NCBI RefSeq assembly: GCF_001194135.2
Contig: NC_068994.1
Coordinates: 57,508,634 to 57,572,633 of the forward strand
Direction: 5' to 3'
Source: Octopus bimaculoides
Taxonomy: Eukaryota
Length of the DNA stretch: 64,000 bases
Shown: positions 40,612 through 61,560 of the stretch, one piece after another
Position numbering within the stretch: the first letter of the stretch is position 1
Layout: the number at the start of each line of letters is the position of its first letter
Made by a program: the position numbers and the translations under genes
The notes under the pieces: model-generated
The model's database searches: none
Seen by the model: only the letters and a program-made list of their open reading frames with translations
Told to the model about the DNA's origin: nothing

Positions 40612-41427
40612 TTACTCTTCTGTCAATTTTGTAACCCTGTCCATTTCTTTCTTGGCTTTTTCCTCGCGTTTTCGTGCTGCTTGCATGGATTGCATATGTT
40701 TGTAGTACATGGAGAAATGATTGACGATTATAGGGACAGTGAAACCAACCGTTAACACACCAGCAATAGCACAAGCAGAACCAATAAGTTTTCCTACGCT
40801 ACTCCTTGGGACCCTGTCTCCATAACCAACCGTAGTCATAGTGATCAGTGCCCACCACATACCCATGAGAATATGGTGGAAATTGTCCTCCTCGGCGTAA
40901 TAGATGAAAGTAGCAAACATAATCATACCGACGTTCATAAAACAAATCATCAACAACAAATCCCAGAAACTGGCTTTGAATGTGTACAGCATAATCCACA
41001 AGCCTGGGACATAACGGACCAAGCGGAAAATCCTGAGGGCACGAAATATTCTTAAAAAATTCACGTAATGCATGGTTTCCAATGCAACATTAGTCTCAGC
41101 TGTGTTGGCAACAATGATGTCGATATAATCAGGAAGAATTGCAACGAAGTCGACATAGTTTAGTGAATTCTTCGCGAATTTTTTCCAGCTTGGACAAGTG
41201 ATGAACCTGAAAAACAAGTCACATGAGAAAAATGCGAGACAAATGAAATCGATTATAATCAATGCCGGATGAGGTACATAGGAGTACATATCCAAATATT
41301 CCGTCTTGTTACTGCGTATTCGTCCCCAAAAACCGTGAATGCTTTCTACTTGGCAAGCTGGATGAGTAGCTACGATGAAAGATATTACGGACAGTGTAAT
41401 AAACGCAACTGTTGCCATACCATAAAC
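40612..41427 (-). CDS. Kv channel-core exon, copy A (Shaw/Kv3-like, S1-S6, short C-tail ending at a premature TAA)
   Basis: The translation has S2 DFICLAFFSCDLFFRFITCP, S4 NFLRIFRALRIFRLVRY, S5 ending FATFIYYAE (Kv3/Shaw-type YYAE), pore WWALITMTTVGYGD and S6 GFTVPIIVNHF. It starts at the acceptor ttctttttgttttatttctatcgacag|GTTTATGGTATG (phase 0). The ORF-track extension to 41583 is read as intron. Confidence 0.9.
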   Translation of the reverse strand, partial: VYGMATVAFITLSVISFIVATHPACQVESIHGFWGRIRSNKTEYLDMYSYVPHPALIIIDFICLAFFSCDLFFRFITCPSWKKFAKNSLNYVDFVAILPDYIDIIVANTAETNVALETMHYVNFLRIFRALRIFRLVRYVPGLWIMLYTFKASFWDLLLMICFMNVGMIMFATFIYYAEEDNFHHILMGMWWALITMTTVGYGDRVPRSSVGKLIGSACAIAGVLTVGFTVPIIVNHFSMYYKHMQSMQAARKREEKAKKEMDRVTKLTEE

Positions 41428-41460
41428 CTGTCGATAGAAATAAAACAAAAAGAAGCAATT
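41428..41460 (-). promoter_or_regulatory. 3' splice site and polypyrimidine tract of copy A (homologues at 48416-48448 and 61561-61593)
   Basis: aattgcttctttttgtttt(a/g)tttctatcgacag is conserved in all three copies. Further upstream the copies align only with frame-breaking indels, and copy B has an in-frame TGA at 48482-48484, as expected for intron. Confidence 0.85.
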
Positions 41461-43636
41461 AAAATATGTTACAAATATGTTAATATTAAACGTAAAATCA
41501 TTTATTGTAGACAATGACACCAATGAAAAAAGAAACCCTTTTGGAAGGCAAACGTATGTGTACAAATAGAAACCATAGAACAATCTAGGAAAGTGGTTTT
41601 ACCTCAGTCTTCGACCGACCCTTGCTTTTTCAAGTGGAAATAATTTCACGGAAATTGTGCTGAAAAGCTTATGGTAAGACTGTTGTACTTCTTGTGAGGT
41701 ATGACTAGAAAAGGTGCTGGCCCCTTATAATGCTTTTATGGGTTTTCTCCATATTGCAGATGTTCAGACCAGATCTTCTGCCTGAGAATGGTTAAACTTT
41801 AAGTTCGTTACTGTTACGTTATTAACGACCCACTACGCAGCATGGATATTGCCATTTCGTATTTGCTTGTCCCGTCATCCCAACATCCTTTTAATATTAG
41901 TTAATGCAGCTCTGCTATAACCCATATACGAGTATTATTCAAAGCGTAGCATGTTTTCATGCGTTAGACCCTATTAGCTATATTTATCTAAGTTGTAGTT
42001 ATTGAGTAACACATTCAGCAGTGAATATGTTGTTAGAGATCCAGGCTAAACCCATCACTAATTTAAACTTAGGTATGTGAACCGTCTTACCTGAATTAGA
42101 TATCACAGGTTGATAAATCTCTCAGTAACGCCAAGGAAGCGATTACTTTTCTTTTGATGAAGCTTGCATACAATCCTAAGATTCGTAAATCAGACGATCC
42201 AAGCCAGGCGATTTGTCCCTTGAGCAGCCATTCACTACCTCTCACATGTCAGTTGCATATTACAAATCTTTCACAGTCTCTTGTGGGCCCCCCACTAAGG
42301 GTCGCGGCAAACCGTCGTGTTAGCTACTAACGTCCATTAGCGTCTCTGACCAATCACTCACTCCGGAGTCGAGCTTACTACACTGCTATTGGAACACCGA
42401 ATACAATTGCTTGGAAGCGATTAACATGCACCCTCCCGGACCATCAGAGACCAAAATATGGCTGTGTTCATCTGTTACACTTCTATCACTTGGGCATATA
42501 AGATGACTTTTGTTCCTTCCGTTTTAGCACACGAACCCTATCTCTAGCAATGCAGCTTTCATATTTCGCACGGAAGAAACAGTCAATAGCAATTCTCTCG
42601 ATTATCAAGTCGCTTGTGATGTCTTTGCTAATTGCCTCTTCAAGCTCGCTAACAAATAACTCTAATTAGTCTCTATTTCTAGCTCTTTACTAAACATTGT
42701 CGAATCATATCTAATCGTCTGTTTCAGCGTGCTCCACCACTGGTTGTTGATGATCATCCTGTCAACTGCCGCTGAAATTTCCGTAGTCTCTGAGCACCGG
42801 AAAAAGCATGCTCAGCTCCCAATAATCAGATTCCTGTCTACGAATTTTATTTAAGCGACCGTACAGCTCACATATTTATGGTCAGTATAGCTTAACTGTT
42901 TTAAAATGTGAACACTCTACACCATCTCAATCCGCTATGAACATACTATCGAAGCACATTATGGATGCGACATGCCCATCCACATTATCTGCTAATCCAA
43001 TCACTGTCTGACAAATCGCTGTCAGTGTCTGACTAGATTATCATTATCTTCATAGTTTTTTTCCCACACATATCTCTAGTTGGTTGAACCTACACAATAC
43101 CATCATGCGTCTAAAATAAACTTCATCAGAAAATAACATTATTATCTCACAGTGAGATAAAAAAATTAAAAAAACATAACGTCATTATGTTATGTGCTTG
43201 TTGCTTACTGGACGTGCTCTTATGGAAGAGAGAGAGAGGGGGGAGAGAGATAAAGACAGACAGGCAGGCAGGCAGACAGAGATCAAGGGTGGGTGTGTAC
43301 TTCAGTGGAGAGAATCCCCCCCTCCCCACTTTTTTTTTCCTTTTTCTAGTTTTTTAAGTTGAAGAATTTCTTTGATTTATTTTTTCTTTCGGAAAAAGGG
43401 GAAGGCAAGAGCATTCATGTTTTTATCATAAGATCCTTTATTATTATTAACAGAATGGTCCCATTTCGGCTTTATCAAACCTCGTCAGCACAGATTAATT
43501 CGACATATTAAAGTTTCTTTTGCTATAATTATCGATATAAAAAACTACCATGTCATTCCCTACCACCGCTTTTTTGTTTGTTGTTTTATGTTGTTGTTTT
43601 TTTTTTAGTTTTTCTTATGTTCAACAAAATTATTTT

Positions 43637-43995
43637 TCATAACCTCCGCTTTCGTGAAGGTGGATGGATTATTTTTGTCGTGTTTGTTTGTTTGTCCGTG
43701 AATAAGATATCTCAAGAACCACTGGATGAAATTTTCAGGAACGTTTGGTCTCGTGACTGGCACAAACTGATTAGATTTTGAGATCGATCCGGTACGTAAC
43801 AAGGATTCTGAATTATTTTATCCTGATTTTTACTTAATTTTTTAGAGCAATCGGGTTCATTTTTAGTATTCTCATTTGTGAGAACAGTCGAGTTTATTTC
43901 AGATATTCTCATTTTAAAAATTATCTCCGGCTAATCGTTGAGAGGACGTTGGTGTTGCCTTGGCGGAAGTCTGCACTCTCTGAGTGCTCTTGTTA
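43637..43995 (+). mobile_element. Non-autonomous Helentron/HINE (DINE-1-like) element
   Basis: 5' aacctccgc...aagg followed by (gttt)n and gaaccactggatgaaatttt; 3' ccttggcggaagtctgcactctctgagtgc subterminal inverted repeat plus hairpin, next to a T-rich site. Confidence 0.55.
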
Positions 43996-59900: not shown

Positions 59901-59901
59901 C

Positions 59902-59936
<35 letters not shown>

Positions 59937-60363
59937 CTATTATTATTATAAAATAATAGTTTACAATTTGTATACTATATTATGTCATCTTTGTTCGCAT
60001 TCGATATTTCTTTATAAAACTCCACATTTCGCTCTGTCTCTCTCATTTGTCTCTTCATCATGTTGGCAAATAAAAAAATCATTATTATTTTAATTATTAA
60101 TTTATTACTTTTAATATTAGTATGATCATCATCAGCAGCAGCAGCAACATTATCATCGTAATTTTTTGGTGCCTTCTTTTATAGACGGCGTGGCGATATG
60201 TAATTTATAAGAATCAACGACTCGTACTGGCTTCAGGTATTAAGGATATCAACATTAGAAATATTAAAATAAGCAAAATCACAGCAACATTTGAATAGTG
60301 GAAGTTAATAACATTCAATGCCGGCGACTTTCACCAGATTGTCGCCCGGCAATACCAATGTCT

Positions 60364-61560
60364 TTATAACATAGATGTTTCAATATCGTTTATCTCGGGT
60401 CCACGGATGACATTTGAGTTTTCACCATTCATATGGCGATGAATGTCTGAATTATCCCAATTATTCTTGCTTGGTACTGGATTCCCAGTTTCTTTAGGTT
60501 TCTTTAATATATGTGATCCATTTGTCGTCTGCTTATTATTATTGGCAAGCATGTAATTTCGAGCAATTCCAACTCGCAAGCGTCTGAGATTATTGCGACT
60601 TGGCAAACTGTCGTAAGATGGCGGATGAAGTTTTGACGAAGAAGAAATATGCAGACGTGGTGTACGTTTTTCTTGTGGTTCATTAGAACGTAGTTTCGAC
60701 GAAGTCCCAGGTCCCATCTCTTCGGCTGGTAGTTCAATTATTTGTTCAGTTTCTATCAACTTTTGCAGCTGATCCAAATCTTCCTGAGCTTTTTTCTCAC
60801 GTTTCTCTGCTTGTTGCATGGATTGCATATGTTTGTAGTACATGACGAAATTACTGACGATAATAGGAACAGTGAAACCGACCATTAACAAACCAGTGAC
60901 AGCACATAACGAGCCAACAAGGTACCCTGCGTCACTTGATGGAGACATATCTCCATAACCAACCGTAGTCATAGTGATCAGTGCCCACCACATACCAATG
61001 AGAATATTGGGGAAATTTTCCTCCTCGGCGTAATAGATGAAAGTAGCAAACATAATCATACCGACGTTCATAAAACAAATCATCAACAACAAATCCCAGA
61101 AACTGGCTTTGAATGTGTACAGCATAATCCACAAGCCTGGGACATAACGGACCAAGCGGAAAATCCTGAGGGCACGAAATATTCTTAAAAAATTCACGTA
61201 GTGCATGGTTTCCAATGCAACATTAGTCTCAGCTGTGTTGGTAACAATGATGTCGATATAATCAGGGAGAATTGCAATGAAGTCCACAATATTCAAAGCA
61301 TCCTCAACGAATTTTTTCCATTCTGGACAAGTGAGGAACCTTGTGATTAAATCAAATGTGAAGAATGCGAGACAAATAAAATCGATTGTGATCAATGCCG
61401 GATGAGGCACAGTGAATAATGTAGCTTCAGAGTTCGTTCTGTTTCTGTGTAATCGTCCCAAAATGTCACGTTCCCCTTCTACTCGGCCGACGGGATGAGT
61501 AGCTATGATGAAAGACAATACGGACAGTATAATAAACACAACTGTTATCATGCCATAAAT
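60364..61560 (-). CDS. Kv channel-core exon, copy C (Shaw/Kv3-like, S1-S6 plus longest C-tail)
   Basis: Same motifs, with TTVGYGDMSP. Acceptor cgacag|ATTTATGGCATG at 61561/61560. The tail contains PPSYDSL and ends ETSML*. Confidence 0.92.
   Translation of the reverse strand: MYGMITVVFIILSVLSFIIATHPVGRVEGERDILGRLHRNRTNSEATLFTVPHPALITIDFICLAFFTFDLITRFLTCPEWKKFVEDALNIVDFIAILPDYIDIIVTNTAETNVALETMHYVNFLRIFRALRIFRLVRYVPGLWIMLYTFKASFWDLLLMICFMNVGMIMFATFIYYAEEENFPNILIGMWWALITMTTVGYGDMSPSSDAGYLVGSLCAVTGLLMVGFTVPIIVSNFVMYYKHMQSMQQAEKREKKAQEDLDQLQKLIETEQIIELPAEEMGPGTSSKLRSNEPQEKRTPRLHISSSSKLHPPSYDSLPSRNNLRRLRVGIARNYMLANNNKQTTNGSHILKKPKETGNPVPSKNNWDNSDIHRHMNGENSNVIRGPEINDIETSML

What the first reader, a model, noticed from the sequence alone, without database searches (positions are those of the whole stretch)
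40700..61300. The three channel cores are a module-level mosaic, consistent with segmental gene conversion
Seen: S1-S2 and the acceptor region are nearly identical in A and B (41161-41470 vs 48150-48462) but differ in C. From S3b through S5, A matches C with only 2 differences over about 245 nt (40888-41130 vs 61020-61265), while B has a different S3-S4 linker (AGHTLEVTLAIKL vs VANTAETNVALET). S6 groups B with C (GYLVGSLCAVTGLLMVGFTVP) against A (GKLIGSACAIAGVLTVGFTVP). The distal tail is identical in A and B over about 117 nt. S4-S5 protein sequence is the same in all three. Inference: no single duplication tree fits, and recombination appears to shuffle S1-S2 loop, paddle, pore and tail modules within one exon.
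Basis: partly seen in the sequence, partly recalled or inferred. Interest (0 to 1): 0.7.

Follow-up and report, generated by a model that had tools for sequence, protein, structure and literature searches.

The report
Gene conversion mosaic in octopus channel exons
Three tandem copies of a potassium-channel core exon in Octopus bimaculoides have repeatedly overwritten short stretches of one another, a real but familiar kind of evolution (regional gene conversion) that makes any single family tree of these copies misleading.

Summary
The window is Octopus bimaculoides. Three uninterrupted Shaw/Kv3-like S1-S6 "core" exons lie on the minus strand: A 40612-41427, B 47330-48415, C 60364-61560. No assembly gap touches them. 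Informative sites form blocks: A=B (S1-S2), A=C (S3b to selectivity filter), B=C (turret/S6), A=B (tail). There are 68 pattern runs against 153±7 in permutations.

Orthologous exons from O. sinensis and O. vulgaris settle the cause. Flanks and unconverted segments group by orthology. In S3b-pore, A and C group by species (bootstrap 98-99%; 12 by-species sites against 2 by-orthologue sites; dS 0.03-0.05 against 0.17-0.19 between orthologues). The distal tail of A and B does the same (6 against 0). The S1-S2 A-B identity is specific to O. bimaculoides (8/260 against 52/260 differences). The S6 B-C grouping predates the species split.

Misassembly and rate heterogeneity on one tree are largely excluded, although the S1-S2 tract still needs long reads.

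Context: the cores lie downstream of a single T1 exon and a fourth core D, both outside the window, and may be alternative terminal exons. The closest analogue is regional conversion among clustered protocadherin variable exons.

The parts
40612..41427 (-). Core exon A: S1-S6 plus a short C-terminus, 271 aa, ending LTEE then TAA.
   Evidence: The ORF is open, has no N, and is preceded by the acceptor ...TCTATCGACAG. Pfam finds Ion_trans at 3.4e-32. The stop is shared with O. sinensis A' (LTQE*).
40437..40611 (-). Untranslated, out-of-frame tail of A that is B-like. 40446-40564 is 100% identical to B's coding tail 47430-47548.
   Evidence: Homology to B ends at about 40437-40446, next to an (AT)n run and gap 39747-40289. 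In O. sinensis the A' tail continues about 250 nt further.
47330..48415 (-). Core exon B: S1-S6 plus a long tail, 361 aa.
   Evidence: The orthologue in O. vulgaris is L003 9521-10603, at 83% amino-acid identity.
60364..61560 (-). Core exon C: S1-S6 plus a long tail, 398 aa. It is the last exon of RefSeq XP_014769438 (P0001), spliced to the T1 exon.
   Evidence: 100% match to P0001 residues 200-597.
41164..41492 (-). A-side of the A=B block: acceptor region, S1, S1-S2 loop, S2 and S2-S3 linker. The partner in B is 48152-48478. Homogenised only in the O. bimaculoides lineage.
   Evidence: 67 of 81 informative sites are A=B. There are 8/260 A-B differences, against 52/260 between O. sinensis A' and O. 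vulgaris B'' (Fisher p = 6.6e-10). dS is 0.019. (ObiA,ObiB) has 96% bootstrap.
40813..41149 (-). A-side of the A=C block: S3b, S3-S4 linker, S4, S4-S5, S5 and pore helix up to GYGD. The partner in C is 60946-61282. B (47801-48137), which lies between A and C on the chromosome, is not homogenised.
   Evidence: 51 of 61 informative sites are A=C. A-C differences are 8/322 in O. bimaculoides and 6/322 in O. sinensis, against 16-18/322 between orthologues. Quartet sites are 12 by species against 2 by orthology (p = 3.7e-14). Three sites are unambiguously derived and shared in O. bimaculoides, and one in O. sinensis.
47660..47800 (-). B-side of the B=C block: post-filter turret and S6. The partner in C is 60805-60945. 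This grouping is older than the species split.
   Evidence: 24 of 39 informative sites. B-C differences are 15/107 and 14/107 in the two lineages, against A-B 29/107 and A-C 31/107. Orthologues pair at 97-100%, and the (B,C) clade has 83% when rooted on D.
47421..47654 (-). B-side of the distal A=B block (linker and tail). The partner in A is 40437-40666.
   Evidence: 77 of 104 informative sites. Tail1 has 0/105 A-B differences in O. bimaculoides and 3/105 in the relatives, against 6-9/105 between orthologues. Quartet sites are 6 by species against 0 by orthology.
61561..61760 (-). Conserved intronic block of about 190 nt upstream of core C. Equivalent blocks lie at about 41428-41576 (A) and 48416-48774 (B).
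   Evidence: It aligns among all four cores and all species. In the last 110 nt, C-D differences are 3/100 (O. sinensis) and 10/100 (O. bimaculoides), against about 28% in the adjacent S1-S2 coding sequence.

Best explanation
The three cores are tandem paralogous exons of an octopus Shaw/Kv3-like potassium-channel locus. The order on the coding strand is T1 exon, D, C, B, A; T1 and D lie just outside the window. Their mosaic similarity comes from repeated, short, non-reciprocal exchanges of about 0.1-0.35 kb, that is, non-allelic (interlocus) gene conversion. In this process a break in one copy is repaired from a paralogous copy 6-20 kb away.

Shown:
- At least three recent or recurrent tracts exist: A with B over S1-S2 (O. 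bimaculoides lineage only), A with C over S3b to the selectivity filter (homogenised in both species, with derived substitutions shared by both paralogues), and A with B over the distal tail (both lineages).
- An older discordance groups B with C in the turret and S6.
- Copy positions and flanks remain orthologous, so copy number and order did not change.

Inferred:
- The exchanges are gene conversion during double-strand-break repair, rather than double crossovers.
- Which tracts persist is filtered by selection. B keeps its own S3-S4 linker and S5 although it sits between A and C. A's untranslated tail is kept B-like, with an open B-type frame, with no need for selection.
For: Identity and layout: one search gives 100% to O. 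bimaculoides XP_014769438. The exons are open and free of gaps. T1 is at L005 12045-12659, D at 41983-42906 and C at 48915-50111.

Mosaic statistics.

Per-segment distances and dS.

Flank orthology to O. sinensis and O. vulgaris.

Conflicting, well-supported segment trees.

Sites grouping by species against sites grouping by orthology: 12:2 in the A/C tract against 2:137 elsewhere, and 6:0 in the A/B tail.

Derived states shared by both paralogues within a species.

A's tail is untranslated yet identical to B's coding tail, which selection on protein cannot explain.

Block edges fall where the three copies share only short identical runs, which does not favour mis-threading by an assembler.

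ObiA keeps A-type diagnostic bases at alignment columns 223-224, just inside the exon, before the homogenised stretch.
Against: The window comes from the Illumina shotgun assembly, later scaffolded only with Hi-C (PMC9068888).

The S1-S2 A-B tract is specific to O. bimaculoides, so the relatives cannot cross-check it.

No independent O. bimaculoides contigs could be retrieved.

B' of O. sinensis and A'' of O. vulgaris were not recovered, so A/B comparisons mix two very close species. Their C exons differ at only 2 sites across the aligned segments.

The direction of conversion could not be resolved.

GC3 is raised in the S3b-pore segment, but equally in unconverted B, so it is not diagnostic.

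The S6 B-C grouping has only 83% bootstrap support.
Confidence: 0.85

Rival explanations
1. Assembly artefact. The short-read O. bimaculoides assembly threaded reads of one paralogue, or one haplotype, into another, creating chimeric exons.
For: The assembly is Illumina shotgun plus Hi-C and has many gaps. Exact shared runs of 95-182 nt exist between copies. The B-tail fragment duplicated at 47122-47178 next to a 10-N gap and the truncated A tail next to a gap show local assembly weakness.
Against: The A=C S3b-pore block and the A=B tail block recur in the independently assembled O. sinensis and O. vulgaris genomes, with species-specific shared substitutions. The exons contain no N. Block edges lie in stretches where the three copies share only short identical runs. 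A and B still differ at 8 sites in S1-S2, and A keeps A-type bases at the start of the exon. At most, this could account for the O. bimaculoides-only S1-S2 tract.
Confidence: 0.06
2. No recombination. One duplication tree holds throughout, and different copies evolved fast in different domains: C in the S1-S2 loop and tail, B in the paddle, A in S6.
For: With three sequences alone, every 'two against one' site is simply a change on one branch. The variable regions are loops and linkers, where relaxed or positive selection is plausible. The S6 discordance rests on 83% bootstrap support.
Against: Synonymous divergence drops 10- to 20-fold only within tracts and only for specific pairs. Paralogues group by species inside tracts, while the same exons group by orthology outside them. 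An untranslated tail is identical to a coding one.
Confidence: 0.03
3. A single chimeric origin. A arose once as a hybrid of B-like and C-like copies through unequal crossing-over, with no continuing exchange.
For: A is the copy involved in all three recent blocks. The A and B downstream flanks are paralogous, consistent with a tandem duplication.
Against: One crossover gives one breakpoint, not four or five. A and its flanks are orthologous between species, so A predates the split. Yet within the tracts, A matches the paralogue of its own species rather than its orthologue. The S1-S2 homogenisation exists in only one lineage.
Confidence: 0.04

Closest known systems
Regional gene conversion among variable exons of clustered protocadherins (teleost and human Pcdh clusters; PMC1852091, which cites Noonan et al. 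2004)
   Same: Tandem paralogous large exons of a neuronal membrane-protein cluster. Homogenisation is confined to part of each exon. Synonymous sites are homogenised. Conversion is lineage-specific, so paralogues group by species in the converted part and by orthology elsewhere.
   Different: There are only three or four copies here. Several different pairings occur within one exon (A-B, A-C, B-C), rather than one shared 3' block. Non-adjacent copies exchange while the copy between them is spared. The protein is an ion-channel core. The GC3 signature used in that paper is not diagnostic here.
Multi-variable-exon clusters with a shared constant part (PCDH, UGT1, GCNT2; PMC1885805)
   Same: One constant exon, with the same donor phase, followed by an array of paralogous exons that each carry a conserved splice acceptor. 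Gene models join T1 to C (RefSeq) and T1 to D (UniProt A0A0L8HTU3).
   Different: The orientation is the mirror image: the first exon (T1) is constant and the terminal exons vary, each with its own stop codon. Use of B and A with T1 is not demonstrated.
Alternative splicing of protostome Shaker-family channels, such as Drosophila Shaker alternative 5' and 3' ends (mentioned in PMC3519636). Alternative pore exons in lobster Shaker are from my own recollection.
   Same: Diversity of an invertebrate Kv channel generated from alternative exons within one locus.
   Different: In those cases only N-termini, C-termini or single segments alternate. Here each unit encodes the whole S1-S6 core plus tail.
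Shaw/Kv3 (KCNC) voltage-gated K+ channels
   Same: The best solved-structure matches are human Kv3.1 (8.1e-79), and the T1 matches Aplysia Shaw T1 3kvt. Pfam finds BTB_2, Ion_trans and Ion_trans_2. The filter is TVGYGD and S4 has five Arg at every third position.
   Different: The margin over Kv2.1 is small (3.9e-70). S6 reads TVP in place of the PVP hinge in A, B, C and the listed cephalopod relatives. The S4 and S4-S5 sequence is unusual (RIFRALRIFRLVRYVPGLW).

Membership tests
Non-allelic (interlocus) gene conversion / concerted evolution | Discordant sites cluster into contiguous blocks more than chance allows. | tested here: met
   68 pattern runs against 152.6 +/- 6.9 in permutations. 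The longest fragments and max-chi2 give p < 5e-5 to 0.003.
Non-allelic (interlocus) gene conversion / concerted evolution | Synonymous divergence within a tract is far below that of flanking segments and of orthologues. | tested here: met
   dS is 0.019 (A-B, S1-S2) and 0.047 / 0.031 (A-C, S3b-pore), against about 0.31-0.47 for unconverted paralogue pairs in these segments and 0.17-0.22 for orthologues in S3b-pore.
Non-allelic (interlocus) gene conversion / concerted evolution | Paralogues group by species inside the tract, while flanks group by orthology. | tested here: met
   Segment NJ bootstraps are 94-99%. Quartet sites are 12:2 and 6:0 inside tracts against 2:137 outside. Flank orthology is shown.
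Non-allelic (interlocus) gene conversion / concerted evolution | The transfer is non-reciprocal, with an identifiable donor and acceptor. | tested here: inconclusive
   The shared O. bimaculoides S1-S2 sequence is a mixture of A-type and B-type states. Both species are homogenised in the A/C tract.
Non-allelic (interlocus) gene conversion / concerted evolution | The sequences are real in the organism, verified by long reads or amplicons. | not testable with these tools
   There is no access to reads. Exact-protein look-ups for independent O. bimaculoides contigs found nothing. The relatives' independent assemblies corroborate two of the three recent tracts.
Shaw/Kv3-type voltage-gated K+ channel | A six-TM Ion_trans core with a TVGYGD filter and an S4 with periodic arginines. 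| tested here: met
   Pfam Ion_trans at about 1e-31 to 1e-32 for A, B and C. The sequence is visible.
Shaw/Kv3-type voltage-gated K+ channel | An N-terminal T1/BTB domain with the Zn motif HX5CX20CC. | tested here: met
   P0001 has HIPVNVC...(20 residues)...CC and Pfam BTB_2. This is encoded outside the window and is shown joined only to C and D.
Shaw/Kv3-type voltage-gated K+ channel | Closer to Kv3 than to Kv1, Kv2 or Kv4. | tested here: inconclusive
   Kv3.1 is the top hit at 8.1e-79 and Kv2.1 follows at 3.9e-70. No phylogeny was made.
Variable-exon cluster sharing one constant exon | Every variable exon is spliced to the same constant exon in transcripts. | tested here: inconclusive
   T1+C is in RefSeq for two species, and T1+D in UniProt A0A0L8HTU3. 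An O. vulgaris T1-containing gene model extends into B''. There is no T1-like exon near A or B in any of the three species. No transcript joining T1 to A or B was found. The annotated private first exon of A lies in a dispersed repeat.
Rfam RF00485 K_chan_RES (Kv1.1 S6 RNA-editing hairpin) | The covariance-model score is above the gathering threshold. | tested here: met
   A 40717-40830 scores 58.8 bits and C 60850-60963 scores 52.0 (gathering score 51). B scores 41.7, below threshold.
Rfam RF00485 K_chan_RES (Kv1.1 S6 RNA-editing hairpin) | The hairpin actually forms and directs A-to-I editing of the S6 isoleucine codon. | not tested
   The alignments carry 8-10 non-canonical pairs and mostly follow conserved coding sequence. 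No editing data were consulted.

The most novel reading that the evidence does not exclude
One octopus Kv3-like gene may carry a single T1 tetramerisation exon followed by four alternative terminal exons, each encoding a complete S1-S6 channel core. That would be a mirror image of protocadherin and UGT1 clusters. All isoforms would share one T1 and so would be free to co-assemble. Under this reading, selection lets regional gene conversion keep the voltage-sensor, S4-S5 and pore module uniform between A and C, while the S1-S2 loop, the paddle linker of B, S6 and the tails stay distinct. The 190-nt intronic block conserved upstream of every core would then be the element that governs which core is chosen.
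Probability: 0.25. Interest if true: 0.7.

Novelty: new member of a known kind. Interest (0 to 1): 0.45.

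Why it matters
There are three consequences.

- Annotation and phylogeny. Whole-exon trees of these octopus Kv paralogues are meaningless. Orthology has to be called from flanks or from unconverted segments.

- Channel biology. The locus is a natural domain-swap series. A and C share their S3b-pore module but differ in S1-S2 and S6. 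A and B share S1-S2 but differ in the paddle and S6. Comparing their gating could assign properties to modules.

- Gene architecture. If the cores really are alternative terminal exons behind one T1 exon, this would be an unusual way to diversify a Kv channel in a cephalopod, and a case where conversion acts among alternative exons of a single gene.

The process itself, regional gene conversion in a tandem array, is textbook.

Tried and rejected
- Docking-site and selector pairing, as in Dscam, between the conserved upstream intronic block and the T1-D intron. An RNAduplex scan timed out. A blastn-short reverse-complement search found only 12-14-nt low-complexity matches at chance-level E-values, with no shared target site. 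G-U pairs and the region downstream of the array were not covered.
- Conserved RNA structure in the upstream block. RNAalifold gave -6.4 kcal/mol and one compensatory pair, so there is no support.
- Direction of the S1-S2 conversion. The shared sequence mixes A-type and B-type states, so it is unresolved.
- GC3 as a signature of biased gene conversion. It is raised in S3b-pore (0.51-0.53 against 0.31-0.43), but also in unconverted B, so it is not diagnostic.
- Involvement of core D. D exons pair strictly by orthology (0-1 against 8-49 quartet sites per coding segment), so D does not take part in exon conversion.
- Independent O. bimaculoides contigs or transcripts. Look-ups for P0005, the A ORF and the B ORF found nothing. 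P0002 was not on record.
- A T1-domain search for T1+A or T1+B transcripts returned only T1-only or partial proteins.
- Whether molluscan Shaw 'isoforms' generally swap cores. The oyster X2 and X3 isoforms differ only at the N-terminus, so alternative cores were not seen in the one bivalve checked.
- A separate promoter or first exon for A (XP_052828570 N-terminus MNSKVDFHGIGTQKIKNWKKIP, window 45163-45228). It lies in a dispersed repeat with stop-containing copies elsewhere in the window, so it is weak evidence for a private first exon.
- Literature. No paper in the held library combines octopus, potassium channel and gene conversion for this locus.

Full report
**What the region is.** The window is Octopus bimaculoides. 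Core C is 100% identical to residues 200-597 of RefSeq XP_014769438, 'potassium voltage-gated channel protein Shaw'. Three paralogous exons lie on the minus strand: A 40612-41427 (271 aa), B 47330-48415 (361 aa) and C 60364-61560 (398 aa). Each is an open frame with no N. Each starts directly after a conserved ...TCTATCGACAG acceptor and ends at its own stop codon. Each encodes a complete S1-S6 Ion_trans core with a TVGYGD filter. The closest solved structures are Kv3.1 (8.1e-79), followed by Kv2.1 (3.9e-70). There are only three copies in the window, and no T1/BTB exon.

**Gaps.** All 22 N runs are outside the exons and outside the similarity blocks. The 10-N gap at 46991-47000 is spanned by one continuous alignment to O. 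vulgaris. Both sides of 45796-46236, 50437-50885 and 51600-52506 are colinear with O. vulgaris. The flanks of 44449-45084 map to B-downstream and A-upstream sequence respectively. The finding does not depend on continuity across any gap. Two weak spots do sit next to gaps. A's tail loses homology at about 40437, close to an (AT)n run and gap 39747-40289, whereas the O. sinensis A' tail runs on for about 250 nt. A 57-nt copy of B's tail is repeated at 47122-47178, just before the 10-N gap.

**The observation.**
- A 40888-41130 against C 61021-61263 has 2 differences, and A against B over that span has 34.
- A 41161-41470 against B has 10 differences, and against C has 71.
- The tail is identical over 119 nt, 40446-40564 = 47430-47548.
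- The peptides quoted for the S3-S4 linker and S6 are right, and S4 to S4-S5 is identical in all three.

A simple segmentation of the 'two against one' site patterns gives these blocks:
- A=B, at A 41492-41164.
- A short B=C patch, at A 41163-41152.
- A=C, at A 41149-40813 = C 61282-60946.
- B=C, at B 47800-47660 = C 60945-60805.
- A=B, at A 40666-40437 = B 47654-47421.

Clustering is extreme. There are 68 pattern runs against 152.6 +/- 6.9 in 20,000 site permutations. The longest run is 50 against a permutation maximum of 23, and max-chi2 is significant for all three pairs.

**Why three sequences are not enough, and what settles it.** For three taxa, each 'two against one' site is merely a change on one branch, so the mosaic alone could reflect domain-specific rate differences. 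I therefore fetched the orthologous loci:
- O. sinensis (GCA_006345805.1): A' in L001; T1 exon, D' and C' in L002.
- O. vulgaris (GCA_951406725.2): B'' in L003 and C'' in L004.
- O. bimaculoides upstream part: T1 and D in L005.

Flanking non-coding DNA fixes orthology. ObiA with its upstream 1.7 kb matches A' at 91%. ObiB with its flanks matches B'' at 85-94%. ObiC with its flanks matches C'' at 89.5% over 4.6 kb.

Trees made segment by segment and rooted on D conflict with high support:
- Upstream intron, S6 and post-S6 pair the orthologues.
- S1-S2 pairs ObiA with ObiB (96%).
- S3b-pore pairs ObiA with ObiC (98%) and OsiA with OsiC/OvuC (99%), with the B orthologues outside (100%).
- Tail1 pairs ObiA with ObiB (94%).

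Counting four-sequence sites gives the same answer. In S3b-pore, 12 sites group A and C by species and 2 by orthology, against 2:137 in all other segments (p = 3.7e-14). In the tail, 6:0 for A/B (p = 2e-6). Using B and D to polarise the changes, three of the twelve A/C sites are derived states shared by both O. bimaculoides paralogues, and one is derived in O. sinensis. So homogenisation continued after the species split, clearly in O. bimaculoides and probably in both lineages.

Synonymous divergence tells the same story. A-B dS is 0.019 in S1-S2, against 0.35 for the same pair in the relatives. A-C dS is 0.047 and 0.031 in S3b-pore, against 0.17-0.19 between orthologues and 0.35-0.47 to B.

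A's tail also lies behind a stop codon that is shared by both species, and it is out of frame with the core. Yet it is base-for-base identical to B's coding tail and keeps an open B-type frame. Protein-level selection cannot do that. Copying from B can.

**Interpretation.** The best explanation is recurrent short-tract non-allelic gene conversion among tandem paralogous exons.
- A with B over about 240-330 nt of S1-S2, in the O. bimaculoides lineage only (8/260 against 52/260 differences, p = 6.6e-10).
- A with C over about 335 nt from S3b to the filter, in both lineages.
- A with B over about 230 nt of linker and tail, in both lineages.
- An older event, or older history, that groups B with C in the turret and S6 (83% bootstrap).

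Notably, A and C are not neighbours. B lies between them and keeps its own S3-S4 linker and S5 residues. This suggests, but does not prove, that selection filters which tracts persist.

Misassembly is unlikely as a general explanation. Two of the three recent tracts recur in the independently assembled O. sinensis and O. vulgaris genomes, and the block edges fall where the three copies share only short identical runs. It cannot be fully excluded for the O. bimaculoides-only S1-S2 tract, because that assembly is Illumina shotgun plus Hi-C. A single hybrid origin of A is contradicted by the species-specific clustering.

**Context beyond the finding.** On the coding strand the order in O. bimaculoides is T1 exon, then 29 kb, D, 6 kb, C, 12 kb, B, 6 kb, A. 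O. sinensis has the same order with longer spacers.
- P0001 (T1+C) and UniProt A0A0L8HTU3 (T1+D) share the same 199 N-terminal residues from one exon, whose donor AAA|GTAAGT is in phase 0, matching all four acceptors.
- No T1-like exon lies near A or B in any of the three species.
- An O. vulgaris T1-containing gene model extends into B''.
- The private first exon annotated for A sits in a dispersed repeat.

This makes 'one T1 exon plus alternative terminal core exons' plausible, but transcripts joining T1 to A or B were not found.

A block of about 190 nt of intron upstream of every core is much better conserved between paralogues than the coding sequence (3-10% against about 28% for C-D). 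Searches for a complementary docking site or a conserved fold found nothing.

**Comparison with known systems.** The pattern is the same kind as regional, lineage-specific gene conversion among clustered protocadherin variable exons, where part of each exon is homogenised, including synonymous sites, while the rest stays orthologous (PMC1852091; see also PMC1885805). In cephalopods, gene conversion has been invoked for protocadherin arrays (PMC9068888). I found no report of it for this channel locus. I therefore rate it a new member of a known kind. The finding is solid and useful but not surprising. The possible shared-T1 architecture is the more unusual, still unproven, aspect.

Noticed in passing
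window 40717-40830 (-), 60850-60963 (-), 47705-47818 (-): Rfam RF00485 K_chan_RES, the Kv1.1 S6 RNA-editing hairpin, matches the GYGD-to-S6 stretch of core A (58.8 bits) and core C (52.0), both above the gathering score of 51. B scores 41.7, below threshold. The alignments mostly track conserved coding sequence and carry 8-10 non-canonical pairs. The 5' arm starts exactly where the A=C block ends.
   Followed up: partly
window ~41428-41576, ~48416-48774, ~61561-61901 (-); L005 ~41790-41982; L002 ~70120-70312 and ~87970-88160: An intronic block of about 190 nt upstream of each of the four core exons is far more conserved between paralogues than the coding sequence. In the last 110 nt, C-D differences are 3/100 in O. 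sinensis and 10/100 in O. bimaculoides, against about 28% in S1-S2. It may be a splice-choice element. No docking-site complement and no conserved fold were found.
   Followed up: partly
outside the window: L005 12045-12659 (T1 exon) and 41983-42906 (core D); window base 64000 corresponds to L005 46478: The T1/BTB exon and a fourth core, D, lie just upstream on the coding strand. Gene models join the same T1 exon to C (RefSeq) or to D (UniProt A0A0L8HTU3). This suggests alternative terminal core exons behind one T1.
   Followed up: partly
window 63638-63751 (-): This is the homologue of the last coding exon of an O. vulgaris T1-only model (P0152, T1 plus 38 aa), lying between D and C. In O. 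bimaculoides it has an in-frame stop after 4 codons (RCYI*), so it would give a T1-only product or act as a non-coding cassette.
   Followed up: partly
window 47122-47178 (-) and 46991-47110: A 57-nt copy of B's tail (19 aa, 100% identical) is repeated about 150 nt 3' of B's stop. It is followed by a GAC/GAT (poly-Asp-like) microsatellite and the 10-N gap. This is either a small real duplication or a gap-closing artefact.
   Followed up: no
window 40290-40446 (-): A's tail homology to B, and to O. sinensis A', stops at about 40437-40446. It is replaced by unrelated sequence and an (AT)n run abutting gap 39747-40289. In O. sinensis the A' tail continues about 250 nt to a B-like ...ETKM* end.
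   Followed up: partly
window 45163-45228 (-): The annotated private first exon of core A (XP_052828570 / A0A0L8HTY1, MNSKVDFHGIGTQKIKNWKKIP) lies inside a dispersed repeat. Stop-containing copies occur at about 6145-6210, 22582-22638, 22769-22825 and 36592-36657. It is probably an exonised repeat or an annotation artefact.
   Followed up: partly
window 55378-56198: A block of about 820 bp is inverted relative to O. vulgaris (L004 16960-17780) within an otherwise colinear C-B spacer that is about 89% identical.
   Followed up: no
cores A, B, C (S6), e.g. window ~40730-40745: All three cores, the O. sinensis and O. vulgaris orthologues and the other listed cephalopod relatives have TVPIIV in S6 in place of the usual Kv PVP gating hinge.
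   Followed up: no
window 46267-46570 and 45235-45524: Sequence downstream of B is also homologous (about 91%) to sequence 1.8-5.8 kb downstream of O. sinensis A'. The original A/B duplication unit therefore extended several kb 3' of the exon. The matching part downstream of ObiA is missing or in gaps.
   Followed up: partly
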